Made by a program: the position numbers and the translations under genes
Notes under the pieces: generated by a model
The model's database searches: none
Seen by the model: the letters and a program-made list of their open reading frames with translations, nothing else
Told to the model about the DNA's origin: nothing
Shown: positions 41 through 62,957 of the stretch, one piece after another
How the letters are laid out: each line of letters opens with the position of its first letter
Position numbering within the stretch: position 1 is the stretch's first letter
Source of the DNA: Selaginella moellendorffii
Lineage: Eukaryota; Plantae; Lycopodiophyta
DNA: 64,000 nt
Reading direction: 5' to 3'
Assembly (NCBI RefSeq): GCF_000143415.4
Contig: NW_003314289.1
Location: 1,730,293 to 1,794,292, forward strand

Positions 41-3000
41 AGACGAAGAAGCTTTGGCGAACACGCAGTGTCCGAGGAACTTAGAATTGCGATGGCAGGC
101 AGAAGCGAGCGCAAGCATCTACGCTGCTCCTCTCATCGCAGACATCAACGGGTGAGTATCCTTGTTTCTTTCTCTTGATGCGAAGAAAACTGTGGATTGA
201 TTTGATACAAGGGATGGGAAACTGGACATTGTTGTGCCGTCTTTCGTTCACTACCTCGATGTTCTTGAAGGAGCAGATGGGGAAAAAATGCAAGGTGTGT
301 TGAGTCGTGGAGCTTGATGGTGCTACTGATTTATGCTTGTCCTCGCTGCTTAGGATGGCCGGCTTATCACCAATCCACAGTGCATTCCAGTCCCTTGCTT
401 TACGATATTGACAAGGATGGATATAAGGAAATTCTTTTGCCGACTTACAACGGAGAAGTTCTTATGTTCCGGTAACTTGAAGCAAAAGTTTGAAGCTCAA
501 AACAAGTTTTGCTCTTTTTTGCTTTGTCAAGTTCGTCGGGCTATCCGATAAATGAGAAGATCACAGTTCCAAGGTTACGGGTTCGAAAGGACTGGTATGT
601 TGGATTGAGTCCTGACCATGTGGACCGATCTCATCCTGATGTTCACGATGATGGTTTAGTGATTCCTTCTCCTCCTGGTACGTATCAATGTCTCTGTGTA
701 AAATCCATTCGCTCTTGTTTAGCTCTTGCGGCTTGCAGGCGTGTCAAGTGACCACGCGGTAGCGAATGCTTCTAGTACCATCGCCACGAAGGATGGACAG
801 AACGGTTCTAGTACTATCGAGACGAAGGATGGACAGAACGGTAGCTCTCCCGGCAATGTTTCGGGAAAACTGGACAACTCAACCTTAAGCAACACTCCGG
901 AGACATTGAACGTTTCAGCAACTGCAACTGCAGGGAATGGATCGGCTACTTTGAAAGTTAGTGACGTCGCTGAAGCTGGGTCAGAACTTCGCATGGGTAC
1001 TACAAGTCCGAATAACACGCAGGGAACACAGAGACGGCTTCTCCAACAGGAAGCCACAGCCGGTGACAACCGAGAGAAACTGGAAGCGGATGCAGAGGCC
1101 ACGTTTGATGTTTTCCGTGATAAGGGAGGGCTGAGTGACGAGTATGCTTACGATTATGACGACTACGTAGACGAATCGATGTGGACCGATGATCACTGGG
1201 TTCAGGCTGTCCACGAAAGGGAAGAAGACTTTATCGACATAGACGCACATATTCTTTGCACACCGGTAAGTGTGTCTTGTTTGGTTTTTGGCAGATGGCT
1301 AATATTGCCACTGTCTCCAGGTGATTGCAGACATTGACAAGGATGGAGTCGACGAACTTATTGTTGCTGCTTCCTTTTTCTTTGATCGTGAGTAAGCTCT
1401 CCTGCCGCTTTTCAACCTTGCATTTGGTAGCACAGGTATTCATTCTTTCTTTGCAGGTATTACGAAGCAAATCCTGACTTGCTCAGCAAGGATGTCGATA
1501 TTAGCAAATACGTTGCTGGAGCCATCTTCGTTTTTAGTTTGGACACGAAACAAGTCAAGTGGAAAATACATTTCGACCTTAGTACCGATTCTGTGGCGTT
1601 CCGTGCGTATATCTATTCATCGCCGACGGTAGTCGACCTGGATGGCGATGGATACCTCAGTATCGTAGTTGGGACATCCTTCGGATTCGTTTATGCTCTG
1701 CATTACAACGGTAATACTTGGTTTTTTTTTCTGTTCTCTCGCAGGCCTCAGAAACTTTTCCTTAACTTGTTTTGTTTGCAATCCAGGTATTGTAAGGAAA
1801 AACTTCCCGCTACAAATGGGAGAGATTCACGCCCAGGTTGTTGCGGCTGACGTAAACGACGATGGGAAAGTCGAGATTGTCACCGCTGACACAAGAGGCA
1901 ATGTTGTTGCCTGGGAGACCGATGGCAAGCTATTGTGGGAAGTTCATCTCAAGAGTATGATAGCTCAAGTAAGTTTTTGATTCGTTTCTCTAGTTTTTGA
2001 AACAAACTTGTCTTTGCAGGCGCCGACTGTGGGCGATGTGAATGGCGATGGAATAACTGACGTGGTTGTTCCGACTGCTTCAGGCAACATCTACGTTTTG
2101 AAGGGCACCGACGGCTCATATGTTCCCCCGTTTCCGTTCCGTACGCACGGCCGGATCATGGCTTCGGTGTTGCTACTTGATTTTGGTAACAAGGAATCGG
2201 AGCAAGCCGACGTGGTCTTGGTTGCAACTTCGTTCGATGGCTACCTGTACATTATCGATGGGAAAACTGGCTGTGCCGACGCAACAGATATTGGAGAAAC
2301 ATCGTAAGCCTCGAGAGCTGCTCGTGATTACGTACTGTTTCTTTTTTTCGTTACAGATATACCATGGTTTTAGTGGAGAATGTTGACGGAGGCGACGATC
2401 TCGATCTGATAGTTACAACCATGAATGGAAACGTCTACTGTTTCCAAACCCCAGTGAAACACCACCCCTTGAAGGTATGAATGTGCATTGCCTCGTGTAT
2501 TCAAAGTGATCTTATCTCCATTTGCAGGCATGGCCGACAGCAAACCAGGGGAGGAACGTCCTGTCACCTCGCTACAATCGCGAAGGCGTTTATGCTCTAC
2601 CTTCGTCCAGAAAGTTTCGAGACGAAGCCGGCGAGAGCTTCTGGGTGGTGTTTAAAATCGTGGATCAGCACAACTTGCACGGGCCTTACAACGTGACTGT
2701 AAGTTCCTCCTCGAAGCTCGGCCTTTCCATTTCTCCAAAACTTATCCTTTGTTTCTCTCGCACAGCTGACGCTCTTGGTCCCGGGGAACTACCACGAGCC
2801 TCGAAGGATCACGCAGTGGCATCGCTACGATCAACCGGGGGTCCAGAAGCTCAAAGTCCCGTGCGTGCCAATCCGGAGCACTGGAACAGTGACGCTGGAG
2901 ATGGTGGACAGGCACGGCCTCGCTTTCACCGACGAATTCTCGCTAACGTTCCATATGCACTACTATCGACTCCTCAAATGGTTCGTGGTTCTACCATTGC

Positions 3001-3089
3001 TGGGAATGCTTGTAGCCATCGTTGGTCTTCATCCCGAAGATCACGTCTCGCTACCTTCTTTCTCTTCCAATGGTAGGCACCAAATGTAG
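41..3089 (+). CDS. DEX1: DEFECTIVE IN EXINE FORMATION 1 (FG-GAP-repeat membrane protein), multi-exon, 5' end outside window
   Basis: Spliced exons translate to [87 protein letters not shown] repeats and C-terminal [21 protein letters not shown] (TM helix), all matching plant DEX1. GT-AG introns are ~50-80 bp. Stop TAG at 3087-3089. Confidence 0.95.
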
Positions 3090-3200: not shown

Positions 3201-5715
3201 ATGGCGCCTCTCCCACTTATCGGTGAGTTTCTTCGCAGATTTCTCGAGGTTAAGTTGATTCGTCGCGGCGATCGCAGTGCGGAGCGCCGAAGGGCTGACG
3301 CTGCTAGGCGGCGAGAGCGAGAAGCTGCAGAGGTAGAATTTTGGTTTCTTGACGTTTCTTAGCTCTCACACATTCTTCGCATTCTTCCATTTGCGAAGGC
3401 TTGCTTGCGCTGGAGCATCGGTTAGCAAGGATGGAAGCGAGCTAGCTGTGATCACTGGCGATGGAGTGGATGTCTTTGATCCAGTGACTTGCAACAAAAT
3501 CCAATCTTTTCGGTTGGACGTTGTTGTTGCTGCTGTCTTCTCGTCGGCCGGATCGTTTCTACAGATCTTTCGAAAGGCAACCGGTCCGGAAGACAAGAAT
3601 GTTGGCATCTGGGACGTGAAAACTGGGGAGGCAGTGGTTCTCTTCTATCAGAAAAACTTTTCAAAGTCAAGCTGGTAAGAAAACTTTTTTCTTCCTTTCT
3701 TCTTGTTTATAGTCTTGAATTCTTTTGGTTGTGTTTACAGGCCGATTCTCCAGTTCAGCGACGACGATTCTGTGGCTTGCCGGCTTGCAACCAACTCGGT
3801 CCAGATCTACGATGCCAAAAACTTTGCAAAGGGTGCTGTCGATCATTTGCGTTTGCCTGGAATTCAAGCTGTGAAACTTTCTCCAGCTTCTCCGTCCTAT
3901 CTCGCAACGTTTATTCCGGAGAGCAAGGTTTTAACTTACGACGATCTTTCTCATATCTTACATGGTTTTCTGGTTTTATCAGGGACAACCGGCCGTGGTG
4001 CAAATATATGATCGTAAAGAGGCTAGCAAATGTCAAGCACTGGCTCGACGTAGCTTCTTTAAGTCGAGTAGCGTCACCATGACTTGGAACGCGGGCTCGA
4101 CCGGATTGCTTGTGCTAGCGGTCACTGACGACGATAAATCCAACCAAAGCTACTACGGCGACACCAAATTGTATTACTTGAAAAGCGATGGGACTTGTGA
4201 AGGGACGGTTCCTCTGAGTAAGTTCATGTTTGTTCTAGCTCTTTAATGTGATGAATCTTGTGCAGACAAAGAGGGGCCTATCCATGACGCTCAGTGGTCC
4301 CCGACCGGCAAAGAGTTTATTGTCGTCTATGGCTGTATCCTTTCAACCGTTTTATATCTATACTGTATCACTTAACGAGACGTCCAGACATGCCTGCTAA
4401 AGCTGCTCTCTTCGATACACAATGCCGGCAGGTTTTTGATTTTGGATCTGGACCTTATAACACCGTGCGGTGGAATCCCTTTGGAAGCTGTATCCTTGTG
4501 GCGTTTCTTTTCTTTTTTGTACTTTGGCTAGTTCTTCCTGACAGGTTCAAGTTATCTGTTTGGCTGGGTTCGGGAATCTTCCGGGTGATATGGTAAGCAA
4601 TAAGTGTTTTATGATACACTGCTTATCTTTGCCACTTCTTCTTCAGGTGTTTTGGGACCGGAACACGCTAAAATCGATTGGAAACACGAAATCTCCCTGC
4701 TCAGTAACGTGTGAATGGGCACCCGATGGCCGGCTACTGATGACGGCCACGACCGCTCCTCGAATGCGAGTCGATAACGGGTATATGTTTGCTATTTTAC
4801 GTGAGTGGCGATTACCTCGACTTGCAACATCAGGATAAGGATCTTCAAGTACACGGGAGCTCTGTTGGAGGAACAAAAGATCAACGATCTTTATCAAGTG
4901 AGTGCTTGGTTATATTTTGCTTTAGATGTAATATTTCCTCGTTTGTTTCATCAGGCGGACTGGCTGCCTGGACAGTATGTTGAGAGGCCAGCTTCGCCAG
5001 TTTCTGCCAAGAGTTCACAAAAAGAAAAACAACCATCTGGTATGTTTTTGATTATAAAAAAAAATAAAATTCTTTACTCGGTTTGTTCTATGCTTTTTAG
5101 CGGCTGCTATAGCCAAACCTGCAGCTTACCGTCCACCTCATTCAAGCATGTCGGCGTCAGTGCGTGCTCAGGTAAGTAATCAGAACAAATCGGGCTGTAT
5201 TACGTGATGGAAAACTCTGTTGCAGCTATTTGGTGAAGAGGACTCCAATGCTGGAAGGTTTGGAGCAAATCCTTTTGTCTGAACTTTTTCTAACTTTTTT
5301 TTTTTTTGCGAACCCAGTGGGTTGAGCAAATCGGCTCTTAAGAACAAAAAGCGACGTGAGAAACAGAAAGAAAAGTCTGAAACACTTCCCGACGCACCAG
5401 TGAGTAGTAGTTCATTCTTTTTCTGCAGCTAACTCCTTTCATCCCTGGTTCTAGGAAGTCGTGAAGGAGGTCAACAGTGAGACATCTTCAGGTGAGACTG
5501 AGAGTCGTTTAAACTGCCTTTTGCTGTGCTCAGAAATTTAGCTTACAGGAGATGAGTTTGCGAAGAAAATTCGAGCTCTGAACAAGAAGCTGCGGCAGAT
5601 AGAGGAACTCAAGAACAAGTTAAGTGGGCAGACGCCATCTCAAGAACAGAAGAGCAAGCTTCAGCAGGAGGCGTTATTGAGGGAAGAAATCAGGAAATTG
5701 GAGCTCTCTTCATAG
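3201..5715 (+). CDS. eIF2A: Eukaryotic translation initiation factor 2A (beta-propeller), multi-exon
   Basis: ATG at 3201. Exons give FYQKNFSKSSWPILQFSDDD, ARRSFFKSS, DKSNQSYYGDTKLYYL, EGPIHDAQWSP, VYGYMPAKA, GPYNTVRWNPFG, LAGFGNLPGDM, TATTAPRMRVDNG, KPAAYRPPH and KKIRALNKKLRQIEELK. Stop TAG at 5713-5715. Confidence 0.95.
4335..4387 (+). other. U12-type (minor spliceosome) GT-AG intron in eIF2A
   Basis: 5' site GTATCCTTT; branch point TCACTTAAC about 11 nt before the AG; removal restores VYGYMPAKA. Confidence 0.85.
4490..4551 (+). other. Second U12-type GT-AG intron in eIF2A
   Basis: 5' site GTATCCTTG; branch-like TTCCTGAC shortly before CAAG; removal restores NPFGSFICLAGFGNLPGDM. Confidence 0.75.
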
Positions 5716-6250
5716 ATGGTTCTGCCTGGAATGAAGTTTTGTTTCGACAGTTAAACGCTGGTGATTCGGAAACTCAAACGCGATCAAGCGTGTACAGGTT
5801 CTTGAATTTCTTTCGCTGTCTTTATTCATTCTTATGGTTTGTTTATTGTTCAGGATGAAGCAGCGCGTCCTAGTACCAATCTGCAAAGCTGAAGAGAGAT
5901 TTCTAATGACATAGCCTTTTCAATTCGAACAATTTTTAGTCATTACAGCTTGACTTGGCTGGTTCTCATTTTGGTTTTAGCTTGCCTGGCAGGTCCAAAA
6001 GTTCTTGTACCATGGAGCACTAGTCGAGGTAGAGATCGATTCATGGAAGGCTTCTCAATTGTTTTTTCTCCCTTTTTCCAGTGCAAGGATACTACTCTCC
6101 AGGAAGTGACAACACTCATGTTAGTTTTTTAAGTCAACGGGATTTTATTCGCAAGGAAAAAAGATCGTACTGCCTTCCCAGGTCGGTAGGGTTTGATAGT
6201 TTTTGATATGAAGAGGTGCTAGCTCGACTGATTTTTCCATTGGCAGTGCT

Positions 6251-7691
6251 ATGGCGATTGTAGGAACGACGAGCTTTCCTCGTGTTTACGCAAATGGAGA
6301 TAAGGGGAGAATTAGGGAAAGTGGTAGCATGGCGGTGACAAGTCGTCCGCGAACTTCATGGCTGTCGGTCTACAAGATCTCCGACACCATCTGGAAGAGG
6401 ATCATCCACTTCCGGGGGCAGCCAACTTCGTCGAGCGTCACAATTGTCGCGGACAAGAGGAGCAAGAGCGATGAGAAGCAGGAGGACAAGATTGCGGCAG
6501 TGGTAGCCGACCAAGCCGACCCTTCGGTCGCTTGGGAGCAAAGGGTCAAAGACGTGGAAGCCGAGAAGCGGCGTCGAGCGCTGCTCAACCCGGGATTTAG
6601 CTTCTCAGCTGCTGGGCTTTTGTTCCCTTACCACCTGGGCGTGTGCCAGTGCCTCATGGAGCGGAACTATATCACGGTACGATCGAGCTCCAACTCTTCT
6701 CCATTTTCTGCTTTTCTATCTTCGCAGGAGGATACTCCTTTAGCTGGATCGTCGGCTGGAGCGCTCGTTTGCGCTGTTGTAGCGGCAGGGATGAGCATGC
6801 AAGACGCACTGGTCGCAACCAAGGATCTAGCACAAGATTGTCGTGCCAACGGGACCGCTTTCAGGCTCGGGGTAAGAGAGATCTCTCGAGGTACTGAGTC
6901 TGTGTCTAGTTTGCTCAGAGCTCCTCTTTATTGTCTCCGTCACTAGGCTGTGCTGAGGAGAGTTTTGTACAAAGTTATGCCCGATGACGCGCACGTTAAG
7001 GCGAGCGGGAGGATCAGAGGTATGGAGCTGTCTCTTTTCTCTCTCCCTTGTGTCATGCTAAGTTCACTACTTCTCTCTGCAGTTGCAATCACGCAACTCT
7101 TTCGAGTACCAAGAGGCCTGCTCGTTGACCAGTTTGATTCCAAAGAAGATCTGATCAACGCGTTGCTTACGTCGTGTTTCATTCCCGGGTAAGTAGTTTG
7201 CTCTTGCGTTCCATTAAGATGGGAGCTTGACTGGTTTTTAGTTATCTAGCACCACGACCTGTTACCGTCTTCAAGAACAGACTGTGCATCGACGGCGGGT
7301 TCACGCTCTTCATGCCCCCTTCAGCTGCTGAAACAACGGTTCTTTCGTGTCACTTGCTAAGATTCGAGTTGGCTTCTGAAACTTTCGCTTTGCTTTTACA
7401 CAGGTACGAGTGTGTGCCTTTTCTGCCAAGCGCCTCGGTCTTCAAGACACAGTGGGTATCAGCCCGGACTGTAATCCCGACAACCGAGCCTCTCCAAGAC
7501 AGGTACAGAAATAATAAAGGTATTTAGTAAATTTCTCGACTGTTTTGCAGCTTTTAAACTGGGCTTTAGAACCGGCTGGAGATGCAGTATTAGATGAGCT
7601 CTATGTCCTGGGCTACAAGGATGCTGCAGTGTGGGCAAATGCAAATCCTTTGATCAATTTTAGAGGCAAGGCAGCAGCTGCTCCAGTTTGA
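6251..7691 (+). CDS. Patatin-like phospholipase-domain protein (PNPLA/ATGL-like lipase), multi-exon
   Basis: Oxyanion-like FSFSAAGLLFPYHLGV, nucleophile GSSAG, SCFIPGYLAPRP, catalytic IDGG, and last exon LLNWALEPAGDAVLDELYVLGYKDAAVWA. Stop TGA at 7689-7691. Confidence 0.92.
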
Positions 7692-7864
7692 AGATGCAAC
7701 AAACGATTGCTGTATCATACTAGAGGCATTCATGCGAAGGTAAGAAAGGAAATATAGAGATTCTTTGGGACACCATTCTCTAGAGACTAGCATTTGTACA
7801 CAAAAGTTCCTTGTTCTACATGGTTGTCAAAAGAATCAAACGTTGTCAAAAGAAACAAACAAGA

Positions 7865-7994
7865 AACTACGTGTGAAGCTTCATGGTCAGTTGTGTGACT
7901 TTGTCAATCGCGTTCTATTTTCCCAGCCCACGTTTGAGAATTTTCCAGTCAAGCGCGTAGGTACCGGGAAGGCGGGCGGCTTCCTGGTATAAAA
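7865..7994 (+). promoter_or_regulatory. Proximal promoter of the isocyanide synthase (repeated before all four copies)
   Basis: TATAAAA at 7988-7994, ~100 bp before the ATG. Also GCC-box (GGCGGCT 7975-7981), W-box (AGTCAA 7947-7952), CGCGTT 7909-7914 and CACGTT 7929-7934. Confidence 0.6.
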
Positions 7995-8093
7995 GCCCAA
8001 CCAGGGAAACCCAGACAATTCATCGATCCCAGTCTGCAATCTTCCATCCTCTAGCCTGAAATTTGAGATTTTCTCTTTTTCTTCATAACACCC

Positions 8094-9659
8094 ATGGCAA
8101 GTTCATATCCAAAGGACAAGATTGCATTCCTGTACATCCACAGAGAGAGTGGTGAGATTGGCTTCGTCTCACAATCTGCGTCCAGGCATGTCCCAGTACT
8201 AGCAGCAAAGTGTGATTTCTTGTTCTCCTCCATGGTCGCGAGTGACAAGGCGGAAGATTTAGAGGCTGCTAAGCAGGCCACACGCTCAGTTGCTCCAGAG
8301 ATGAACAAGTACACCATTTCCATGCTTGGAGCAGCAGCTGACCAGGAGTGGACAGCCACCGTCTACGAGAGATACATTGGGAACGGGTTCGAGGGCGTGG
8401 TTTTCATCCAGGATCCCAATCTCCAGGAGGAGGACAGCGAGAGCATGAGCTATCTGGCCTCTCTGCTGCTGGACAACGGCGTCATGACCAGAGATTGCCT
8501 TCTGGAGCCCTCCAGCTCGCACACACCTCAAGAGGTGGACGACATCACCTCCCAAGTTGTGGACATCATCGAGAAGAATTACATCCACTTCCCAAAGCAC
8601 GACCAGTGGTTCACAAGTGGGGGCAAGCAGAGGTTTGCGGACAAGGTGAGGTACCACGTCGCAAGAAACATTCCACTCGAGTTCGTCTTGCCCGCATTTC
8701 CAGTCAAGTCGTGCAATCCCGACAAGACTCTGGGAAAGTGCCCGGACAAGGCCGAGGAGCTGGCCATCCATTCCATGAAGATTGTTGCGGATCTCATCAA
8801 GGCCGTGTATGCTCCAGGCGTGCACTACAACGTCGCCTCGGATGGCCATGTCTTCTCTGATCTCGTCGGCTCGGACGACGCTGCTGTGGATTCTTACGGC
8901 GAGATGTTTTGGGAGATGGCACACAATCTGTATCCCGGCCTTGTCAATTTCTTTCGCCTGGATGAGTTTCTGCTGGACAACCACAGTGACAAAGACATTG
9001 CAAAGCTTATCTCCAACACCACCGTGGAGCATCCCGTTGCGACTGAGCTCACCGCCAATGCAGAGAATGCCAGGCGAGCTCTCATGTGCTTGTTTGGATG
9101 TGACGAGTCAACCGTCACCAAGGAGATCAAGGAGGACCCGGAGACACGCAATCTATATCGTGGCTTCTCCAGGTTCATGCTCGAGGACTTGTACGAACAC
9201 AAGAGCTGCAAGAATCTCCCGTCAAAGTCGGCCAAGAAGAAGCTGTGCAGCCAGGTTGCCTTCCTCATGATCCTCAGGAACCGTGCATACTCGGCCATGG
9301 TGGAGTGGCTCTTCCCTTTGCAGCTGCGCATTTCCATCCACCCGCATCCAAACAGAGGTCCCAAGTATGGCATCAACATCATCCATTCCTCTCTAGTGGC
9401 AGCGCAGCGTTCTTCCGAGGAGAAGAACTTCCACATCCCAACACCATGGCACAACGCGGTGGTGGAGCTGGCAGATGGCAAGTTCATGCTGCTGCACTCC
9501 AAAGTCATCCGAGGTTCGAGTATGCAGGCCACAGAAATGGCCTGTGAGCAGCTCGAGTTGAGTCAACAGTTGGTTCTCAAGCGTCAAGGCTACAGAATGA
9601 CGCTGGTGACATATCCAGACGGCAGACCCAGCCACTACAGGCAGGTCAGTGTCTGCTAA
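8094..9659 (+). CDS. Isocyanide synthase, DIT1/PvcA family (Dit1-like), copy 1, intronless, 521 aa
   Basis: Family motifs occur in the canonical order: FVLPAFPVKSCNPDKTLGKCPDKAEELA, SDGHVFSDLVG, LYRGFSRFMLEDL, VAFLMILRNRAYSAMV, LRISIHPHPNRGPKYGI, HIPTPWHNAVV. Confidence 0.93.
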   Translation: MASSYPKDKIAFLYIHRESGEIGFVSQSASRHVPVLAAKCDFLFSSMVASDKAEDLEAAKQATRSVAPEMNKYTISMLGAAADQEWTATVYERYIGNGFEGVVFIQDPNLQEEDSESMSYLASLLLDNGVMTRDCLLEPSSSHTPQEVDDITSQVVDIIEKNYIHFPKHDQWFTSGGKQRFADKVRYHVARNIPLEFVLPAFPVKSCNPDKTLGKCPDKAEELAIHSMKIVADLIKAVYAPGVHYNVASDGHVFSDLVGSDDAAVDSYGEMFWEMAHNLYPGLVNFFRLDEFLLDNHSDKDIAKLISNTTVEHPVATELTANAENARRALMCLFGCDESTVTKEIKEDPETRNLYRGFSRFMLEDLYEHKSCKNLPSKSAKKKLCSQVAFLMILRNRAYSAMVEWLFPLQLRISIHPHPNRGPKYGINIIHSSLVAAQRSSEEKNFHIPTPWHNAVVELADGKFMLLHSKVIRGSSMQATEMACEQLELSQQLVLKRQGYRMTLVTYPDGRPSHYRQVSVC

Positions 9660-12429
9660 TATGTGATAGACGGTTTTGATTCTGGGTAAATTCCCTCAGG
9701 CCCATTTTTTTGTAAATTTTAAAAAGAGTAAATACCATTTTCTCTCTCACTTCTTTGTCTCCATCTGGAATTCTAAAAATGAACCGTACAAACAGAAGAA
9801 ATAGAGAACATATTGTTGACTGTATAGTGCTTCCTCTGTTACTACAAATATATGAATACCATTACAGCAGTATAGGGGTCACTACTAACTTTGACAATCT
9901 TTTACTTCCGCTCCTTCTCTGGATCAATGTTGTGAAGAAGAAGCCCTGGATTGAAAATTCCTCAATACCGACACTATTCACCGCCTAAGTTTTACGCTGT
10001 GTATATTTCAGTCCAATTTTGTAAGCGGCTCAAGCTGCACAACACGTTACATGCTTCGCTCCAGCGTAGGCCATCCTGTCTCCATAAGGACGAGACGTGG
10101 TCTTTGGCAACTTGAGAACTTTAGGATGTGTTTGACAAGCCTTCTTTTTGAAACAAAGGTTTTTGCAGGACAATGTCATACGTCATCTATAGTCAAGTGG
10201 AATTTGTGGTCAAAGAATGTTTGCTACTCGTTTTGCGTTATACGGTATTTATGCATCATTTTAAACACGTGTTTTAAGAGCAGGAAAGCAGCAAGAAGCT
10301 ACCTGTTTTCTTTATGCAAAGTCTCAACCGTCTGATATATAAAATGTAACTATGGTTCTTGTCAGAATTAGATGGCCTGACTTTCTATGGCAAGTTTGGA
10401 TTCACATCAGATTCTCTTCTTTTTATGGAGCTTGCTTCCCTGGTATTTGTTTTCTTCTTTGTTGACTTACATAGTTCAAGTATACATTACCATGGTAAAG
10501 GAGTTCCAGTGCAAACTATCAGAGCGAGATATGTACTGTAGGCCCGTGCTTTGCCACCATTGCCTCCATCATACCAGTGCTTCACCCTTGCATTCAGCTC
10601 CATCGTTGTACAACTCAGACCACTCGCTAACCAAAATTCGAATGACTGCATACTAGGTAAAGTCATGCCGCTGCCAATGGCTAACCTGTTCATTCTTTTT
10701 CTTGGCCGTACATCATGTACCTCCTCATGATTAACAATTTTATTCATAAACATTCACATGGTTTTGTTTGTGTGGCTTATATTAAATTACTATGAATATA
10801 CCTTGAAAGCAACCTGGGGGTTGTAACGTATGGCTGTGCTAAACACCCATGACTGGATTTCCATGGAAATAGCAGACATTTTGTGTCATCAAGATGCCAG
10901 GTATGTGAAGCACTCAATGTGGAATCAAAAGTCAAGTGGGGCTTCCCAGGGACATGAGGAGTGGCCTCGTTTGCATTGAGGACTGGGGCCCCCAGTATGC
11001 TTGACCTCATGCCACAGACAACACTCTCAATGCTGTTGGAGAAAAACTTTTGTCCTTCTGCTATGCAGTATAGGAATGTCAGTGGCCTGGACACACACTG
11101 GGAGGCTACACTTGTGAGGCATGGATCCTTGCAAGGCTTACATGGTCTCATACTGTGTGCTGCCTCAGAAACTCTGGATGAGGAGCTCAGCGCGGCCTAG
11201 ATCAGGGTGCAAGGATTCTCAATGTGAGCGGTGTTATTGCTGAGATCTTAGGCAATTGCACTGCATACAATGGCAAATCCAGCGTGAGCTGGAGTGGACT
11301 TGCTGCAAGCTGCAGCTCGTCTCACTGCAGGCTCCAGCTTTGGAGAGCTGCCTCCTGCGAGCTGCACCGCTCGGGGCAGGAGTGCTGTGCCTTCACAGAG
11401 ATTCATGCGTGTGGCTACAAGCTCTAGTAGATCCAACAATGAGGTATCCTTGGAACATGGCCTATGTCCACACGCCAGCTCCACTCAAACTTCTAGCACC
11501 ACCCAAGAGCTGTCTTGAGATGGGACCAGTTCCCCAGGACCCTTGGAGTGAGAGAGATTTCCCTGCCAACCAAGGGGTTTCCCACCACCTCTCTACCTAT
11601 GCAAAACAGAAGAAATTCATCTACCCTTTGGCAGAAAAACATGTATTATTATTCATTATACTATTTATAACATTATAATATCCAAACAACAGATCCCTGA
11701 GAAGAATGTGAAGCCACTAGCAACTGCAGGATTCTGGAGCCAACTCTCCTTCTTGTGGCTGAATCCACTGCTCAACTTTGGCCATTCCAGGCTGCTAGAG
11801 CTCCAAAACATCCTCAATCTTCCACTAGAGTATAGATTAGATTTTAGAGTAAAGGTGTAATAATATATATGTGAGTGTGTGGAATATGAAAATAGAATAT
11901 AGAAATATGCATATCAATTAACCCAAAAACACTAATTTAAATATAATAGCGGGTGGTCAAGATTGAAACCAATCTAATGGATATCAAAATCCCAATATGT
12001 TAATAATAGTATATGGCATTGTAGTTGTACATTTGGACTTCAAAGCATTGCCTCCTTTTAGAAGGATAGAAGACAGTTAAAGTCTTTTGGTGGATGGGCC
12101 GGGATTTAGAAGAATATCAAAAGCAAGCATTTATGGATCTATAAGTGGTGTCAATTGTTCTTGATCCCTTTGTACAAAGCATTTTAATCGCTGCATATAC
12201 ATAATTTTTAAAGGATCAACTTGTTTAACGTTATGTTGAACCTTATAAACTTGTAACACCTGATATGGTCCTTTCTATTAAGTAAGGAGCGCTTTAGATA
12301 AACTGTATACTGTAAGATTGGAAATAGATTAACACCAAAACATCCACTTTGTAATTTATAGATGGATGATGATGGGAGTTATAGCACCGTTATTGTTCCA
12401 TTTATATGTGGCTCAAATGTTTGGTAGAC

Positions 12430-13968: not shown

Positions 13969-15263
13969 CTTGCGTCCTTATTACTTGCTCTTACGTGCAT
14001 TGAGGATGCCTTCAACTTCGTTTTTTTTTTTCCCTTAGATAACCTCAGCTAAAGGTTTTATTTGGTCCTTGCGAAATGGATCCTTAAAGTATAGCTTGAG
14101 TAAGTTCATGTGGAACACAAGGTGCATCTTCCCCATCTCCCGAGGAAGTCGAAGGCGATAAGCTGCCTTACCAATTCGAGCCTCAATATCATAAGACCCC
14201 ACGAACCTGTTTAAAGAACTCAAGATCAATTCATTTCCAAAAATGCATGCATTTTACCTTTGGGTCAACTTCTACCTAATCCCACTTGATAACCTTAGGT
14301 TCTTGGTATTTAGCCACACTTTATCCCTAGGTTAAAACTCTACATCTAGGTGCTTTTGATTCACATATTTAATTTACATTTGTTGAGTCCGTTCTAAGGA
14401 ATCCCTCACTAAATTCTAAATGTTGAGTCTTTCTACTGTGAACGCCTCCACTACAGGTAACTCTCCATGATACTCAGCCATATTGAATTTCACAGGACCT
14501 TCAATAACTCGCCCATTGATGACTTCTCATGGACTCACCCCAATACTCGAATGTGGTGAGCTATTATAGCACATTTTTGCAAGTCCCAAATGACTTACCC
14601 AATCAATTTGGTTTCCAAAGACATACCATCGCAAATAATCCTCCAGCTACCTATTTACACTTTCTATTTTTTCATCTGTCAAGAAGTGTTAGTGCCATCA
14701 AACTTGACTTAATACCCATTACCTGTCTGTGGATGATAGACTATGCTAAATTTCAACTTGGTGCGATATTGTTTTAGGAGAGTTCTTTAGAACCTACTGG
14801 TGAAGATCTTATCTAGATTTGAGATAATCTCTTTTGGCCTTCTTTGCACTTGAACCACTTGTTTAAAGAACAACTTCACCACACTTTCTACATCCACTTC
14901 TGTTGTGATGGGTATGCCATTTTCAAAAATCAATCAATCACTACGAATATTGCATCAAACCTCTCATTTGAGGGGAGTTCTGTGATGAAGTCCATTATAA
15001 GATATTTCACAAACGATCTAGAATTATGAGGCTTTGTAATAAGCTCTCACTAGCCTTAGTCACGGCTTGACCACTGACATATTAGACATCNNNNNNNNNN
15101 NNNNNNNNNNNNNNNNNNNNNNNNNNNNNNNNNNNNNNNNNNNNNNNNNNNNNNNNNNNNNNNNNNNNNNNNNNNNNNNNNNNNNNNNNNATCTTTAGCC
15201 ATATTTAGCTAGTGATACTTCCTCTTAAGTAAGCCCATCGTTTTGGGCACTCCACCATATCCT
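13969..15263 (-). mobile_element. Decayed chromovirus-type gypsy integrase/chromodomain fragment (spans the 100-N gap)
   Basis: RFVGSYDIEARIGKAAYRLRLP...HLVFHMNLLKLY. Near-identical to 28009-29224 and homologous to 48000-49200. Confidence 0.8.
15091..15190. other. Assembly gap (100 N)
   Basis: A run of exactly 100 N. The paralogous position (29130-29151) has only ~20 bp, so the gap size is a placeholder. Confidence 0.95.
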
Positions 15264-15496
15264 GGTCATAGTCTATGGACCAAATGAGAGATGATGTTGA
15301 CAAGTTCAACAATACTCACAACAGGTTTTGTATAATAAAAAAAATGATCAATGAAACAACTAAGATATTGCATCTTGCCTAAAAAGGGTTGCACATCATT
15401 CACACACTTTAGAGTAAGGAACTTAAGAATAACTACAAATTTTTCAAGATCAACTTGCAAACCTTCACGAGAAATACAGTACCCAAGATAAGTAGT

Positions 15497-15890
15497 TGTG
15501 AGACACAAAATCCCTAGGCCCCAAAGTGGAGCTGAAAGGGCACAACGTGGTAGTGGCCGAAGCGAAAGCTAAATGAGCATAACACGTTTGGACTAAAAGC
15601 TCTGACTTGAAAAGGTTGAGAGTTGGAGTGGAACTCCCAACAAAGTGCTCGAGGAACAAGCACGAGGCGAGCCATGAGTGAGTCTCTAGAAAAGGGGACA
15701 CAAGAGGACCAAAACATGACACGTGGAAGTGTCCAAGATGGAGTCTGAGGTGGAGTCTAAGGTGGAGTCCGAGATGGAGTCCGAGGTGGAGTCCGAGGTG
15801 GACCCGAGATGGAGTTCGAGATAGACCTGAGATGGAGTCTGAGATGGAGTCCGAGATGGACCCAAAATGGAATCCGAGATGGAGTCCGAG
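15497..15890. repeat. LTR-like fragment ending in a (GAGATGGAGTCC)n-type tandem array; copy at 29457-29850
   Basis: Begins TGTGAGACAC and is homologous to 16795-17250. It replaces ~0.5 kb of RT that is still present in the inverted paralog (59790-60310). Confidence 0.55.
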
Positions 15891-16794
15891 AATTTATATA
15901 TAAAATTTTGATTTGATTGGTGATCAATGATAAGTAGGAACTATGATTGGACAAACATCTCCAATGGAATAAAATGATGTGTTGCAATCTTAGCCCCAGA
16001 CGATAAATCAAATTCAAAGAGATTAGCATACTCCTTCATGAGTCGGTCAACCACTACAACACAAAAATCATTGAAGGGATCTAAAGAGGGAATAAAGGAA
16101 CAAAATAGAAACATAAGAGGAAATAATGAAGCGACAAAAGTGATAAAGGCAAAAGGACAAAAAAGAACAGAAATGAGAGGAATACAAAAAATATAAGGAA
16201 GTATAAGACAATAGGAAAAGTAGTAAAGTCACATTTGACATGATTGTGCTGTAACCAATCCATATAAAGGATGAGGGCAAAAACTTGACTCAGCAGCACC
16301 CGCAACAACTACAGTTTAAGCTCGAGATCTCCCACACGCATAACTAAGTCTACCTTATTCCATGGACATGCATATGTACAACTGTTGTCATAAAGAATGA
16401 AAACTAACTCTGCCACATGACATAAATGTAGATAGCAACATGTGACCATAAACTAAGCAATAGAAGATAAACTCAAGCTTATATTAACTAATATAGATAG
16501 AATAATATGAGACATCTTATTATAAAAATGAGCTTGGAAAGTAAATACTGGATGAGCTTGTGCCAAATAAACCCCTTGATAATACTCTCGAAAAAAAAAT
16601 GGAAGGGTCACAGATTTATTCACACAAGGACCCTCTACTACTTGTATGACTCCTTGTTTCTCAAAAACATCTTGGTGTCCTGACCTTCCACTGCAGCAGC
16701 ACCAACAGGTTGTTGTTAACGCCAGGGTTTCCACCCAGAAAATAAAGGTTGCTAATCCGAAAAATGCTAACATGACCAATTTCATCACATGTTT

Positions 16795-18300
16795 ATGAGA
16801 CACAAATCCCTAAGCCCCAAAGTGTCACAAATACCTAATCCCCAAAGTGGAGCCGAAAGGGTGCCACATGGTAGTGGCCAAAGCAGAAGCCACGAGCATA
16901 ACACATTTGGGACTAAAAGCTCTGACTTGGACAGTCGAAAGTGGGAGTGGAAATACCAATGAAGTGCTCGAGAAACGAGCATGAAGCAAGCAGTAAGTGA
17001 GTCTCTAGGAAAGGGATACAAAAGGACCAATACATGACACATGGAAGTGTTAAAATGTAGTCTAAAATGGACCCGAGACGGAGTTTGAGATGAAGTCCAA
17101 GATGGAGTCTGAGAAGAAGTTTGAGATAAACCCAAGATGGAGTTTGATATGGACCTGAGATGGAGTCTAATATGGACCTAAAAGGGACTTGAGATGGAGT
17201 CTAAGATGGACCTAAGATGGATCCAAGATGGACCTAAGATGGAACCGAGATGGAGTTCGAGGTCGAGTCTGAGATGGACTTGAGAGAGAGTCTAAGGTTG
17301 AGGTTGAGAAAGAGATTGAGACCGAGACTAAGAAAGAGACCGAGACCGAGACCGAGATCGAGATTGAGATTGAGACTGAGACCGAGATCAAAACCAAAAT
17401 CGAAACCGAAACCAAGACCAAGTCTGAGTCTAAGTCCAAGTTTGAGTCCGAGGGTGAAAGCCCAAAGCATTCATCTCCTAAACCCTAAGGGGTTTGGTGA
17501 GCTCCAAAAGTATAGTAAGGGGAGGATTTTAATGGAACTAGTTTAGCTAGGAAAGGTTAGTGTGACCAAGGAAGGTTATACCCATGTGTTGGGTGATGAT
17601 ATATCCACTAAAGCTTGAGTGAATACAGATAGACAAGCAGGGTAGTTTGGTGAAATGTTCAAAAACCGGCTTTAGCTCCCTTGGGAGATCAAATGGTCAA
17701 TACTCTCAATCCAGGTTTGAGTGGCATTACCTATTTAGATACCTAGTGTGGCTTATTAAAACCTCACTCTAGCCACATGGTTAGGCACCTAAGGGTGAAA
17801 GGTGGGGAGAGTACCTATGAAGCTTGTGTAAGGTTGCGGTGTTTCGAAATATTGTCTTAAAGTCAAAGACTATAGAAAGGAAGAGGAGCAATAGTGACTA
17901 AAGACACGATCACATGGTGAAGAAGTCCCAAAGAACAGTGGGATTTAGTGGTTAGGCTTTTGATCCTTGACATACTGATGGGGTTGATGAGCATAGCCCT
18001 GGATGAAAAAGCACTTGGTAGGGACAAAAGAAGGGATATTGGGGAAGGGTGTTTCACATGTTTCTGAGCATCTTAAGGGTGCTAAAGTGTGGTCAAAGGA
18101 TGACCATTCATGGATGGATGGCTTAATCTTTGAGAGATAAGATTGTGATGTAGGTGATCTTGGATTACTGATATGATAAAGGTGAATGGGTATGGCCTTA
18201 GTATAATAAGTGGATATATCAATAGTACCTTTGGGTGTTAGTTATGAGATCAGAAATATATACTACTTAAACCAAGTGCAAAGGTTAAATGCCATATATA
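16795..18300. mobile_element. Probable LTR-like element of a third family with degenerate 6/12-mer arrays (copies 30755-32260 and inverted 56800-58290)
   Basis: TGTGAGA-like terminus and GAGATGGAGTCC/GAGACC arrays at 17060-17450. No coding capacity. Right boundary uncertain. Confidence 0.4.
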
Positions 18301-18986
18301 CCATTCACGAGGCTAGCATATCCCCAAGTCCTAAATAAGACTTATGGAGGTTGTGAGTGAGACTCCTCCAAATAGTTAAAGGTGTGGTTAAATGATTAAA
18401 GTAGAATGGAAAAATTAATCACTTATAATGCCTAGCAGCAGACATCATGACCATGACCATATCCTTGCCTTTGTCTATAAACTCGGGAAGTAATAGCATC
18501 ACTATTAAAATAGAACCATTTCCCATAGAAAGAGAAGAAGAAGTGATGCACTATAACATTGTGCCAAGCAAAGAGTATTATTTGGCTCTACATAAAGCAA
18601 GAAGCTCGAAAATAAATGCTAAATTGCATCATTAACTTAGATGGTCCTTGATGAAGACAAACCAATTGTTAAAATACATCATCATAATCATCGACATGTT
18701 CAAATATGCATTTCAAAATGTTTAGGAAAATGCTCCAATCTACATGTGTGTTGTTGATTTTTGGGATGATATTCAGCATTTACGTGAGTTTCCCACATAT
18801 CTCCAATGGACAGTGTTGCAATAATATAATGATTTGAGCACCAAAAGATGATTGCTATCTTCATTGGGAAGTGTATGATTGCCAGAATATAAAGAATATT
18901 AGTGGGCAATGCATCAAAGTAATTAAACCTCCAAGGATTAGACCATTCTCTAGTACAAAAATTTTAGATGAAATAGTTAGCATCTG

Positions 18987-19577
18987 TCTCTCTGCAGTTG
19001 CAATCATGCAACGCTTTTTTGAGTGCCAAGAGGCCTGCCTGTTGACCAGTTTGACTCCAAGGAAGATCTGATGAACACATTGCTTACATTGTGTTTCAGA
19101 GCAGTTTGCTCTTGCATTCCGTTCAGATGGGAGCTTGACTGGTTTTTAGTTATCTAGCACCACAATCTGTTACCGTCTTTAACAACAGACTGTGCATCGA
19201 CGGCAGGTTCACGCTCTTCATGCCCCCTTCAGCTGCTGAAACAACAGTTCTTTTGTGTCACTCACTAAGATTTTAGTTTTGGCTTTTGAAGCTTTCGTTT
19301 TGCTTTTACACGGGTAAGAGTATGTGCCTTTTCTGCCAAGCACCTCGGTCTGCAAGACACAGTGGGTATCAGCCCGGACTGTAATCCCGACAACCGAGCC
19401 TCTCCAAATAATAAGAAGTTAAAAGGTACATACCTAAGTTCTTGCAGCTTTTAAACTGCCGGCTGGAGATGCAGTATTAGATGAGCTCTATTTGTTGGCT
19501 ACAAGGATGCTGCAGTGTGGGAAAATACAAATCCTTTGATCAATTTTAAAGGCAAGGCAGCAGCTGCTCCAGTTTGA
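18987..19577 (+). pseudogene. 3' fragment of the patatin gene co-duplicated with ICS copy 2
   Basis: Homologous to 7071-7691, with frameshifts, deletions (e.g. loss of GGGCTTTAGAA in the last exon) and damaged splice sites. Confidence 0.9.
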
Positions 19578-19980
19578 AGATGCAACAAACGATTGCTGTA
19601 TCATACTAGAGGCATTCATGCGAAGGCAAGAAAGGAAATATAGAGATTCTTTGGGACACCATTCTCTAGAGACTAGCATTTGTACACAAAAAGTTCCTTG
19701 TTCTACATGGTTGTGAAAAGAATCAAACGTTGTCAAAAGAAACAAACAAGAAACTACGTGTGAAGCTTCATGGTCAGTTGTGTGACTTTGTCAATCGCGT
19801 TCTATTTTCCCAGCCCACGTTTGAGAATTTTCCAGTCAAGCGCGTAGGTACCGGGAAGGCGGGCGGCTTCCTGGTATAAAAGCCCAACCAGGGAAACCCA
19901 GACAATTCATCGATCCCAGTCTGCAATCTTCCATCCTCTAGCCTGAAATTTGAGATTTTCTCTTTTTCTTCATAACACCC

Positions 19981-25900: not shown

Positions 25901-25904
25901 AAAT

Positions 25905-26074
25905 TATTGATATTAGGTTTTAAGATCAGTATTTGATGAGCATTCTTCCACTAGTTTGAGTATTGATATTAGGTTTTAAGATCAGTATTTGATGAGCATT
26001 CTTCCACTAGTTTGAGTATTGATATTAGGTTTTAAGATCAGTATTTGATGAACATTCTTCCATTGGTCTGAGTA
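25905..26074 (+). repeat. 56-bp head-to-tail tandem repeat x3 (copy at 39865-40034)
   Basis: TATTGATATTAGGTTTTAAGATCAG... starts at 25905, 25961 and 26017. Single-copy in the paralog near 62720. Confidence 0.9.
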
Positions 26075-26092
26075 GAGTCTACAAAACACCTA

Positions 26093-29000: not shown

Positions 29001-29224
29001 CTCTCATTTGAGGGGAGTCCTGTGATGAAGTCCATTATAAGATATTTCATAAACGATCTAGAATTATGAGGCTTTGTAATAAGCTCTCACTAGCCTTAGT
29101 CACGGCTTTGACCTACTGACATATTAGACATGTCTTTACATAATCCTAGATATCTTTAGCCATATTTAGCTAGTGATACTTCCTCTTAAGTAAGCCCATC
29201 GTTTTGGGCACTCCACCATATCCT
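26093..29224 (-). mobile_element. Truncated duplicate of the Cassandra/chromovirus composite element
   Basis: Cassandra LTR and internal domain (26093-26489), chromovirus LTR from 26490, then 3' region, chromodomain and integrase. Equals 40053-43184 at offset 13,960. Confidence 0.8.

Positions 29225-62926: not shown

Positions 62927-62956
<30 letters not shown>
62927..62956. repeat. (TA)n microsatellite
   Basis: About 15 TA units. Confidence 0.9.

Positions 62957-62957
<1 letters not shown>

What the first reader, a model, noticed from the sequence alone, without database searches (positions are those of the whole stretch)
8094..9659. Fungal Dit1-type isocyanide synthase embedded in a land-plant genome: candidate horizontally acquired isocyanide pathway
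Seen: an intact, intronless, GC3-rich 521-aa ORF begins 402 bp after a spliced plant patatin gene. It carries every DIT1/PvcA hallmark (LPAFPxKSxN..K.LG..PDKAEELA, SDGHVFSD, RxSIHxH, TPWH). Established: this family converts an amino-acid amine to an isocyanide using ribulose-5-phosphate (bacterial PvcA/IsnA, fungal XanB/CrmA); yeast Dit1 yields N-formyltyrosine for the spore wall. It is not a standard plant family. From memory, the ~140-aa N-terminal extension and the blocks LYRGFSRFMLEDL, VAF.MI.RN.AYS and HIPTPWHN resemble fungal Dit1-type enzymes more than the shorter bacterial PvcA. Inference: fungus-to-plant gene transfer that gave the plant isocyanide (metal-chelating, antimicrobial) or N-formyl amino-acid chemistry. 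Physical linkage to DEX1/eIF2A/patatin, and co-duplication with patatin exons, argue against contamination.
Basis: partly seen in the sequence, partly recalled or inferred. Interest (0 to 1): 0.96.

Follow-up and report, generated by a model that had tools for sequence, protein, structure and literature searches.

The report
Fungal-type isonitrile synthase genes in Selaginella
A spikemoss (Selaginella moellendorffii) carries four near-identical, transcribed tandem copies of a yeast-Dit1-type isonitrile synthase gene, part of a family of about 20 that most likely came from a chytrid-like fungus; its presence in this plant was already listed in a 2018 paper, but its origin and function were never studied.

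Summary
The 521-aa ORF at 8094-9659 is a strong DIT1_PvcA match (Pfam E 7e-83). It lies 402 bp after a spliced patatin gene, in the order DEX1, eIF2A, patatin, DIT1. The window holds four copies differing by 1-4 nt. The genome is Selaginella moellendorffii (scaffold GL377593.1).

Contamination is excluded. Paralogues sit on at least 10 large scaffolds among plant-specific genes. Three RNA libraries hold an unspliced transcript (about 8042-9803) with silent flanks.

A fungal origin is well supported:
- In an ML tree the nine Selaginella paralogues form one clade (100/100) that groups with Chytridiomycota (99/94), inside the fungal Dit1 clade (100/98).
- The predicted structure matches yeast Dit1 over residues 5-521. 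Other isonitrile synthases match only from about residue 140.
- Two basal paralogues keep a phase-1 intron at the same codon as three chytrids and an ascomycete.

Caveat: an AU test does not reject placing Selaginella outside all fungi (p 0.16).

Paralogues show purifying selection (dN/dS 0.13-0.19).

Lim et al. 2018 (mBio) already listed 23 Selaginella PF05141 gene models, calling the plant "one species of moss", without analysing them. This is a new member of a known family. Product and partner enzymes are unknown.

The parts
8094..9659 (+). DIT1-type isonitrile synthase gene, copy 1 (521 aa, intronless)
   Evidence: ORF; Pfam PF05141 E 7e-83; AlphaFold pLDDT 87 with a full-length match to yeast Dit1
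19981..21546 (+). DIT1 copy 2 (2 nt and 1 aa different from copy 1)
   Evidence: exact protein P0001 at GL377593.1
33941..35506 (+). DIT1 copy 3 (same protein as copy 2; flanks also nearly identical to copy 2)
51545..53110 (+). DIT1 copy 4 (3 nt and 2 aa different from copy 1)
8042..9803 (+). Extent of unspliced RNA contigs over the gene (5'UTR about 50 nt, 3'UTR about 145 nt). RNA depth is zero or near zero upstream of the contigs (about 7804-8040) and zero beyond 9808
   Evidence: read laying on three RNA runs, X2, X10 and X16
7990..7997 (+). TATAAAAG box about 45-50 bp upstream of the first RNA contig base. It lies in the 300 bp that are identical in all four copies
   Evidence: sequence; repeat family D1, 7802-8101, 100% in four copies
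7072..11198 (+). About 4.1 kb duplicated unit, copy 1 (patatin 3' exons plus DIT1 plus downstream). The other copies are at 18987-23067, 32947-37027 and 50689-54421
   Evidence: self-BLAST, 95.6-97.9% identity; flanks 0.9-7% diverged against ORF 0.06-0.26%
15191..43184 (+). Two tandem units of 13,960 bp at 98.6-99.4% identity, carrying copies 2 and 3. They are interrupted by N gaps at 38498-38804 and 40731-40864, with another gap at 15091-15190 at the left edge
   Evidence: A real recent duplication cannot be told from haplotypes joined by the assembler
5847..7782 (+). Patatin-like phospholipase gene, spliced; stop at 7689-7691
   Evidence: RNA junctions; Pfam Patatin hit below the curated cut-off (22.7 vs 27.7 bits); reconstructed CDS with a GSSAG motif
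3935..4835 (+). eIF2A gene exons
   Evidence: Pfam PF08662 on three ORF pieces
1431..3073 (+). DEX1 gene exons (FG-GAP repeats, DEX1 beta-sandwich)
46408..47913 (+). LTR-retrotransposon gag/protease fragment between copies 3 and 4. An RT-RNaseH fragment lies at 60488-60949
   Evidence: Pfam Retrotrans_gag, zf-CCHC, RVP_2, RT_RNaseH

Best explanation
These are resident, transcribed nuclear genes of Selaginella moellendorffii. They encode a two-domain enzyme of the fungal Dit1 type: an N-terminal PAS-like domain followed by a PvcA/IsnA-type isonitrile synthase domain. The family entered the Selaginella lineage once, by horizontal transfer of an intron-bearing gene from a fungus, most likely a chytrid-like one. 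It then expanded to about 20 gene models on many scaffolds. The window's subclade lost the intron and was amplified in tandem, and its four ORFs are kept nearly identical by gene conversion or very recent duplication. Inferred mechanism, from what is established for PvcA/IsnA and yeast Dit1: the alpha-amino group of an aromatic amino acid (probably L-tyrosine) condenses with C2 of ribulose-5-phosphate to give an alpha-isocyano acid. That product may hydrate to N-formyl-tyrosine, as in yeast, and feed an unknown downstream pathway (a defence or metal-binding metabolite, or a wall cross-link). Shown here: the gene, its copies, its context, transcription, family membership, fold, phylogenetic position, the shared intron and purifying selection. 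Inferred: enzyme activity, substrate, product and biological role.
For: Family and fold:
- Pfam PF05141, E 7e-83.
- All 21 residues that are invariant across bacterial, fungal and plant sequences are present.
- Sequence hits to PIsnA (9DH4, 9DHM) and PvcA (3E59).
- AlphaFold model with pLDDT 87 and pTM 0.89. Foldseek TM 0.84-0.88 by target to PIsnA with L-Tyr or product bound, and to PvcA.
- Best Swiss-Prot model is yeast Dit1, aligned over residues 5-521 (TM 0.77/0.75). PvcA, AmbI, XanB and CrmA align only from about residue 140.

Plant residence:
- The gene order is DEX1, eIF2A, patatin, DIT1 on a 1.97 Mb scaffold.
- Paralogues are flanked by PPR-DYW, CesA, LSD1, BAHD and 2OG-oxygenase genes.

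Expression:
- RNA contigs from three runs cover 8042-9803 without splicing. Intergenic DNA is silent and patatin is correctly spliced in the same libraries.

Origin:
- The nearest non-Selaginella relatives are chytrids at 44-50% identity; bacteria are at 28-35%.
- ML tree: Selaginella clade 100/100, with chytrids 99/94, inside the Dit1 clade 100/98.
- The phase-1 intron at SDL|VG in paralogues P0005 and P0006 has the same position and phase as in Geranomyces, Phlyctochytrium, Cladochytrium and Colletotrichum.
- The N-terminal M..YPKD start is shared only with chytrids among 254 homologues.

Constraint:
- dN/dS is 0.13-0.19 at dS 0.37-1.09 among paralogues.
- The four window ORFs are 0.06-0.26% diverged, against 0.9-7% for the flanks.
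Against: - The AU test does not reject a tree in which all Dit1-type fungi form a clade that excludes Selaginella (lnL difference 13.6, p 0.163). Nesting within fungi rests on branch support plus rare characters.
- The Selaginella stem branch is long (0.76).
- No Dit2-type P450 or Dtr1-type transporter lies beside any of the five loci examined. No Selaginella protein is among the top 120 relatives of yeast Dit2. The yeast pathway is therefore not simply copied.
- No plant isonitrile or bis-formyl-dityrosine product is known to me.
- Expression cannot be assigned to one copy, because the contigs match all near-identical copies.
- The absence of other lycophytes from the hit lists may reflect database coverage.
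Confidence: 0.78

Rival explanations
1. Vertical inheritance: a Dit1-type gene was present in an early eukaryotic ancestor and was lost from all plants except the Selaginella lineage. The shared intron would then be an ancient eukaryotic intron.
For: The AU test does not reject Selaginella lying outside the fungal clade. The stem branch is long. The G[RK]PSH[YF] C-terminal motif is also seen in some outgroup sequences, so it is ancestral.
Against: No other Viridiplantae sequence appears among 134 and 1277 significant homologues in the two large searches. The ML tree groups Selaginella with chytrids at 99/94, and the fungal part follows the fungal species tree. This rival needs very many independent losses.
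Confidence: 0.1
2. The genes are real and fungal-derived, but they no longer make an isonitrile. They have been recruited to another reaction or role, or many copies are non-functional relics.
For: No Dit2/Dtr1 or PvcB-type partner lies beside them. Several Selaginella models are fragments (P0012, P0099, P0104, P0125, P0172). Even yeast Dit1 yields N-formyl-tyrosine rather than a free isonitrile (my knowledge, and the 2023 preprint read).
Against: All family-invariant residues are kept. dN/dS is 0.13-0.19. The gene is transcribed. The fold is retained, with a confident model around the active-site core.
Confidence: 0.1
3. Contamination or assembly artefact: the ORF belongs to a fungal associate and was mis-joined to plant DNA, and the four copies are assembler duplicates.
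For: Copies 2 and 3 lie in 13.96 kb units that are 99% identical and interrupted by N gaps. The v1 assembly holds two haplotypes, so that one duplication could be artificial.
Against: Copies 1, 2/3 and 4 have clearly different flanks (3-7% upstream), so there are at least three loci. Paralogues lie among plant-specific genes on at least 10 scaffolds of 0.6-6 Mb. Two paralogues have 55-57 nt introns, comparable in length to the 48-75 nt patatin introns next to the window gene. An independent 2024 DNA run holds the ORF at 4-25 times the depth of single-copy patatin sequence. Homologues are only 44-50% identical to any fungal protein.
Confidence: 0.01
4. Bacterial origin: the gene was acquired directly from a PvcA/IsnA-bearing bacterium.
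For: PF05141 is abundant in Actinomycetota, Cyanobacteria and Pseudomonadota.
Against: Bacterial sequences are 28-35% identical and form the outgroup. They lack the N-terminal domain. A spliceosomal intron is shared with fungi.
Confidence: 0.01

Closest known systems
Saccharomyces cerevisiae Dit1 (P21623), the spore-wall maturation enzyme that makes N-formyl-L-tyrosine
   Same: The two-domain architecture is the same. The predicted structures align over residues 5-521 against 42-536 (TM 0.77/0.75). Both belong to the same Dit1-type clade (100/98). The catalytic motifs are the same.
   Different: Only about 29% full-length identity in the alignment, or 41% over the 61% of the query covered by the best local BLASTP alignment. 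There is no adjacent Dit2 P450 or Dtr1 transporter, whereas yeast has DIT2 divergently next to DIT1. It is a multicopy plant family rather than a single sporulation gene.
Chytridiomycota Dit1 homologues (Geranomyces, Phlyctochytrium, Blyttiomyces, Cladochytrium, Zopfochytrium, Irineochytrium)
   Same: These are the nearest relatives: 44-50% identity, and collinear over 98% of the length with Geranomyces P0013. They form a clade with Selaginella at 99/94. They share the phase-1 intron, the N-terminal M..YPKD start and the C-terminal GRPSHY motif.
   Different: The chytrid genes keep two or three further introns. They sit beside OPT and AMP-binding (NRPS-like) genes, or are fused to an MFS transporter next to a P450. 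None of these partners is seen beside the Selaginella genes.
Bacterial isonitrile synthases PvcA (3E59), PIsnA (9DH4, 9DHM), AmbI1/2 and IsnA
   Same: Same catalytic fold (TM by target 0.81-0.88) and the same invariant residues. These enzymes establish the chemistry: an amino-acid amine plus ribulose-5-phosphate.
   Different: They are about 300-330 aa, single-domain, 24-35% identical, and usually paired with a TauD-type oxygenase. The plant protein has an extra domain of about 140 aa.
Fungal XanB, CrmA, IcsA and IcsB isocyanide synthases (Aspergillus fumigatus)
   Same: They share the PF05141 domain. They are listed together with the Selaginella models in the Lim et al. 2018 table.
   Different: They are fused to a dioxygenase or to NRPS modules and match only residues of about 137-519. 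They lie in a different part of the ICS tree, because the Dit clade is deeply diverged from other fungal ICSs (2023 preprint).

Membership tests
DIT1_PvcA isonitrile synthase family (PF05141) | Profile match above the curated threshold | tested here: met
   278.6 bits against a cut-off of 26.4, covering 269 of 273 profile positions
DIT1_PvcA isonitrile synthase family (PF05141) | Family-invariant residues kept (K205, S206, N208, K211, D218, E221, D250, G251, R412, S414, H416, K424, W452, H453 and others) | tested here: met
   21 invariant columns in a 13-sequence bacterial, fungal and plant alignment, and 9 in a 50-sequence alignment. All are present in the window protein
DIT1_PvcA isonitrile synthase family (PF05141) | PvcA/IsnA fold | tested here: met
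   AlphaFold pLDDT 87. Foldseek against 9DH4, 9DHM and 3E59 gives E 1e-21 and TM by target 0.84-0.88
DIT1_PvcA isonitrile synthase family (PF05141) | Catalysis: amino-acid amine plus ribulose-5-phosphate gives an isonitrile | not testable with these tools
   Needs a recombinant enzyme assay
Fungal Dit1-type subfamily | N-terminal domain plus ICS domain, collinear with yeast Dit1 | tested here: met
   Yeast Dit1 model aligned over query residues 5-521, TM 0.77/0.75. All other ICSs align only from about residue 140
Fungal Dit1-type subfamily | Falls inside the Dit1 clade in a phylogeny rooted with bacteria | tested here: met
   Dit1-type clade of 42 rows, including Selaginella, at 100/98
Fungal Dit1-type subfamily | Conserved fungal intron positions | tested here: met
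   One of three conserved fungal introns (phase 1, window aa 257/258) is present in P0005 and P0006. It has been lost in the window copies
Fungal Dit1-type subfamily | Clustered with a Dit2 (CYP56) P450 and/or a Dtr1 MFS transporter | tested here: not met
   No P450 or MFS gene within 10 kb either side of five Selaginella loci, nor among the window ORFs scanned. Genome-wide presence is inconclusive: no Selaginella protein in the top 120 Dit2 relatives
Horizontal gene transfer, fungus to plant | Patchy distribution: absent from other plants | tested here: inconclusive
   Selaginella moellendorffii is the only plant named among the hits. Coverage of other lycophytes in these databases is unknown
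Horizontal gene transfer, fungus to plant | Recipient sequences nested within the donor group | tested here: inconclusive
   Grouped with chytrids at 99/94 inside the fungal clade, but the AU test for the alternative gives p 0.163. The shared intron and N-terminal domain support a fungal source
Horizontal gene transfer, fungus to plant | Integration in the recipient genome, not contamination | tested here: met
   Plant genes flank the gene, introns are short like those of the neighbouring patatin gene, the gene is transcribed, and an independent DNA run holds it

The most novel reading that the evidence does not exclude
Selaginella runs a real isonitrile or N-formyl-amino-acid pathway, which would be the first in a land plant. 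It would be built on about 20 fungus-derived Dit1-type synthases that were captured with an intron from a chytrid-like fungus and then combined with plant tailoring enzymes. BAHD acyltransferases and 2OG oxygenases lie within 2-10 kb of three paralogues. The products would be metal-binding or antimicrobial metabolites, or a cross-linked wall component.
Probability: 0.4. Interest if true: 0.8.

Novelty: new member of a known kind. Interest (0 to 1): 0.62.

Why it matters
To my knowledge, isonitrile natural products and their PvcA/Dit1-type synthases are treated as bacterial and fungal chemistry, and no land-plant pathway is known. Here a vascular plant holds a large, transcribed, selectively constrained family of such enzymes. 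The likely donor group can be named, and an intron was carried across kingdoms, which is unusually direct evidence for eukaryote-to-eukaryote DNA transfer. This makes a concrete question testable: what does a plant do with an isonitrile synthase? It also points to Selaginella as a source of new metal-binding or antimicrobial chemistry. The novelty is tempered because the occurrence was already listed in Lim et al. 2018, and because fungus-to-early-plant transfers are an accepted phenomenon.

Tried and rejected
- Literature. Searches for Selaginella with DIT1, isocyanide synthase, dityrosine plus HGT, spore wall maturation, and pyoverdine found nothing relevant. A search for PIsnA found no paper for the 2025 structures. 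A search for isonitrile synthase structures returned only ScoE papers. All ten literature searches are used, and I could not check large plant-HGT catalogues.
- Dit2 partner. A search with yeast Dit2 returned only ascomycete CYP56 proteins in the top 120, which is inconclusive for Selaginella.
- BAHD transferases next to P0003 and P0006, tested as a possibly co-duplicated cluster. They are only 25% identical to each other and carry plant-type HXXXD and DFGWG motifs, so there is no evidence of co-transfer or a shared duplication.
- The C-terminal GRPSHY motif, tested as a character uniting chytrids and Selaginella. It also occurs in outgroup sequences, so it is ancestral.
- N-terminal domain by BLASTP. 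Similarity to a chytrid is marginal (E 0.001 over 24 aa) and there is none to yeast. Only the structure shows the homology.
- Retrocopy hallmarks for the intronless window copies. There is no poly(A) tract after the 3' end.
- The ESM Atlas search added nothing beyond PF05141 clusters.
- P0228, an unnamed 275-aa relative that covers the N-terminal part, lies next to MFS genes in a metagenome-like contig. It groups with a chytrid-clade sequence and is not a plant sequence.
Full report
**1. The observation**

The ORF at 8094-9659 (+) is intact and encodes 521 aa. It matches Pfam DIT1_PvcA (PF05141) with E 7.3e-83, 278.6 bits against a cut-off of 26.4, over residues 185-476. Its GC3 is 0.695, against 0.524 for the neighbouring patatin coding sequence.

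RNA contigs define the patatin gene by eight short junctions, seven of them with GT..AG ends. Its stop codon is at 7689-7691, exactly 402 bp before the ATG. DEX1 (FG-GAP repeats and the DEX1 beta-sandwich) and eIF2A (PF08662) lie upstream on the same strand.

The copies differ by 1-4 nt and 0-3 residues.

**2. Where it comes from**

The protein is found letter for letter on scaffold GL377593.1 (1.97 Mb) of Selaginella moellendorffii assembly GCA_000143415.2. Further paralogues, at about 50-90% identity, lie on at least nine other scaffolds of 0.6-6.2 Mb. NCBI names several of them "spore wall maturation protein DIT1".

**3. Repeat structure**

- A unit of about 4.1 kb (7072-11198) is present four times. 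It starts inside the patatin 3' exons and includes DIT1.
- Copies 2 and 3 sit in two 13,960-bp tandem units that are 98.6-99.4% identical and contain N gaps.
- The ORFs differ by only 0.06-0.26%. The upstream flanks differ by 3-7% and the downstream flanks by 0.9-5%. The exception is copy 2 against copy 3, which are alike throughout.

There are therefore at least three distinct loci. Synonymous sites are as uniform as the rest of the ORF, so the ORFs are being homogenised, by gene conversion or by very recent spread of the core. Purifying selection alone would not give this pattern. The copy 2/3 duplication could be real, or it could be two haplotypes joined by the assembler. LTR-retrotransposon fragments lie between the copies.

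**4. Not contamination**

- Four other paralogue loci are embedded among plant genes. These include PPR-DYW editing factors, a RING-type cellulose synthase, an LSD1 zinc-finger gene, BAHD acyltransferases and plant-type 2OG oxygenases.
- Two paralogues (P0005, P0006) have a 55-57 nt GT..AG intron, comparable in length to the 48-75 nt patatin introns next to the window gene.
- An independent 2024 DNA run holds the ORF at roughly 4-25 times the summed depth of single-copy patatin sequence, as expected for a multicopy family.

**5. Expression**

Contigs from three RNA libraries splice patatin correctly. They have zero or near-zero depth over about 7804-8040 and zero depth beyond 9808. They cover 8042-9803 continuously with no junction. 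One 994-nt contig matches the window without a single difference.

This is a separate, unspliced mRNA with short UTRs. A TATAAAAG box lies at 7990-7997, about 45-50 bp upstream of the first RNA contig base. It falls in the 300 bp that are identical in all four copies.

Limits: these are assembled contigs without strand information, and they cannot be assigned to one of the near-identical copies.

**6. What the protein is**

- All 21 residues that are invariant in an alignment of bacterial, fungal and plant sequences are present.
- The sequence matches the solved isonitrile synthases PIsnA (9DH4 with L-tyrosine, 9DHM with an isonitrile product) and PvcA (3E59).
- An AlphaFold model built on 50 homologues is confident (pLDDT 87, pTM 0.89). 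Its C-terminal 370 residues superpose on those structures with TM by target of 0.84-0.88.
- Against Swiss-Prot models, the best match by far is yeast Dit1, aligned over residues 5-521 (E 5e-35, TM 0.77/0.75). PvcA, AmbI1/2, XanB, IcsA/B and CrmA align only from about residue 140.

The roughly 140-residue N-terminal extension is therefore the Dit1-type domain. It gives weak PAS/GAF-like matches.

**7. Origin**

*Sequence similarity.* In a word-indexed search of 5.8 billion proteins and an exhaustive HMMER search of 1.84 billion representatives, every hit above 50% identity is from Selaginella moellendorffii. The next hits are Chytridiomycota at 44-50%: Blyttiomyces, Cladochytrium, Zopfochytrium, Geranomyces, Phlyctochytrium and Irineochytrium. 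Dikarya follow. The best bacterial and archaeal loci reach 28-35%. No other plant is named among the hits.

*Phylogeny.* An IQ-TREE analysis (LG+C20, 60 rows, 389 columns) gives these groupings:
- The nine Selaginella paralogues form one clade at 100/100.
- That clade groups with the chytrid lineages at 99/94.
- Its sister is Basidiomycota plus Ascomycota, at 87/68.
- The whole Dit1-type clade has 100/98 support, with bacteria outside.

The fungal part follows the fungal species tree.

*Topology test.* An AU test does not reject the best tree in which all these fungi form a clade without Selaginella (lnL difference 13.6, p 0.163). Strict nesting within fungi is therefore not proven by likelihood alone.

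*Rare characters.* Two characters fill the gap.
- The Dit1-type N-terminal domain is shared. The M..YPKD start is seen only in Selaginella and chytrids among 254 homologues.
- The intron is shared. The early-branching paralogues P0005 and P0006 have a phase-1 intron between SDGHVFSDL and VG, at window residue 257/258. An intron of the same position and phase occurs in Geranomyces, Phlyctochytrium, Cladochytrium and the ascomycete Colletotrichum.

Two further conserved fungal introns (residue 395 phase 0, residue 417 phase 2) are absent from the Selaginella genes. The window copies, P0002 and P0003 form the most derived subclade and have no intron at all, which means intron loss. No poly(A) remnant marks them as retrocopies.

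An intron-bearing fungal gene transferred as DNA is the simplest reading. A bacterial source is excluded.

**8. Constraint and age**

Pairwise dN/dS among the window gene, P0002, P0003, P0005 and P0006 is 0.13-0.19, with dS from 0.37 to about 1.0-1.1. The family is old within this lineage and has stayed under purifying selection.

**9. How it probably works**

This section rests on established family knowledge and is not tested here. PvcA/IsnA-type enzymes condense the alpha-amino group of L-Tyr or L-Trp with C2 of ribulose-5-phosphate and fragment the adduct to an alpha-isocyano acid. In yeast, the Dit1 step yields N-formyl-L-tyrosine, which the P450 Dit2 couples and Dtr1 exports (as summarised in the 2023 preprint).

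The plant enzyme keeps the catalytic core, so the same first step is the best guess. The downstream steps must differ:
- No P450 or MFS gene lies within 10 kb of any of the five loci examined.
- No Selaginella protein is among the top 120 relatives of yeast Dit2 (inconclusive).
- The chytrid relatives do have partners. Geranomyces and Phlyctochytrium have OPT and AMP-binding (NRPS-like) genes beside DIT1. Cladochytrium has a P450 next to a DIT1-MFS fusion.

Tandem amplification with homogenised ORFs is compatible with selection for dosage, as is often seen in specialised or defence metabolism. That is an inference.

**10. What is already known**

Lim et al. 2018 (mBio, PMC5974471) state that ICS proteins occur in "one species of moss" and have "outlier representation in ... 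plants". Their Table S1 lists 23 SELMODRAFT gene models, labelled Streptophyta. The presence of the family in this plant is therefore on record, but not its origin, expression, gene structure or the tandem array. I found no paper treating it as a horizontal transfer. I could not search the supplements of large plant-HGT catalogues.

Earlier first-stage notes of this scan flag more copies on the same scaffold and elsewhere in this genome. I used them only as leads.

**11. Verdict**

This is a new, plant-resident member of the fungal Dit1-type isonitrile synthase family, most likely acquired from a chytrid-like fungus. Activity, substrate, product and role are open. Interest is moderate to high, not extreme.

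Noticed in passing
window 8094-8520 (protein residues 1-140): The N-terminal extension folds confidently into an alpha/beta domain. It gives weak PAS/GAF/LOV-like structural matches and superposes on the N-terminal domain of yeast Dit1. Its function is unknown.
   Followed up: partly
L087:131-13721 (Geranomyces) and L088:1-8101 (Phlyctochytrium): In two chytrids, DIT1 lies next to an OPT oligopeptide transporter and an AMP-binding/NRPS-like gene. This may be a conserved chytrid gene cluster distinct from the yeast dit1/dit2/dtr1 cluster.
   Followed up: no
L089:3899-9247 (Cladochytrium); P0130 (Irineochytrium); P0122/P0254 (ENA metagenome): Dit1 is fused to an MFS (Dtr1-like) transporter in proteins of 881-1108 aa. 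In Cladochytrium a P450 fragment lies just upstream.
   Followed up: no
L086:6346-9133, L084:5858-7239, L085:15331-20999: Plant-type tailoring genes lie near three Selaginella paralogues. BAHD acyltransferases lie 2-4 kb from P0003 and P0006, with a FabA-like gene also beside P0003. Two DIOX_N/2OG-Fe(II) oxygenases lie 4-10 kb from P0005. The two BAHDs are only 25% identical, so the adjacency may be chance.
   Followed up: partly
window 7194-11059 and the three equivalent stretches: The ORFs plus about 300 bp of promoter are 99.7-100% identical among copies, while the outer flanks differ by 0.9-7%. This is a concerted-evolution pattern.
   Followed up: partly
L003 (Candidatus Woesearchaeota MAG, JBLKOK010000004.1): This is the best prokaryote-labelled hit (E 2e-48). 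In the ML tree it falls on the eukaryote-ward side of the main split rather than with the bacteria. It could be a mis-binned contig or a separate transfer.
   Followed up: no
window 16352-19178 vs 55908-58731, and 11133-12203 vs 62945-64000: Long inverted repeats at 89-95% identity flank the array. They are probably transposable-element copies and could mediate rearrangement.
   Followed up: no
runs X1 (organism A) and X10 (organism C): Runs filed under two other coded organism labels hold about 60% of the sampled words of the query stretch (window 7600-10100). I could not tell whether these are relabelled samples of the same species or close relatives.
   Followed up: no
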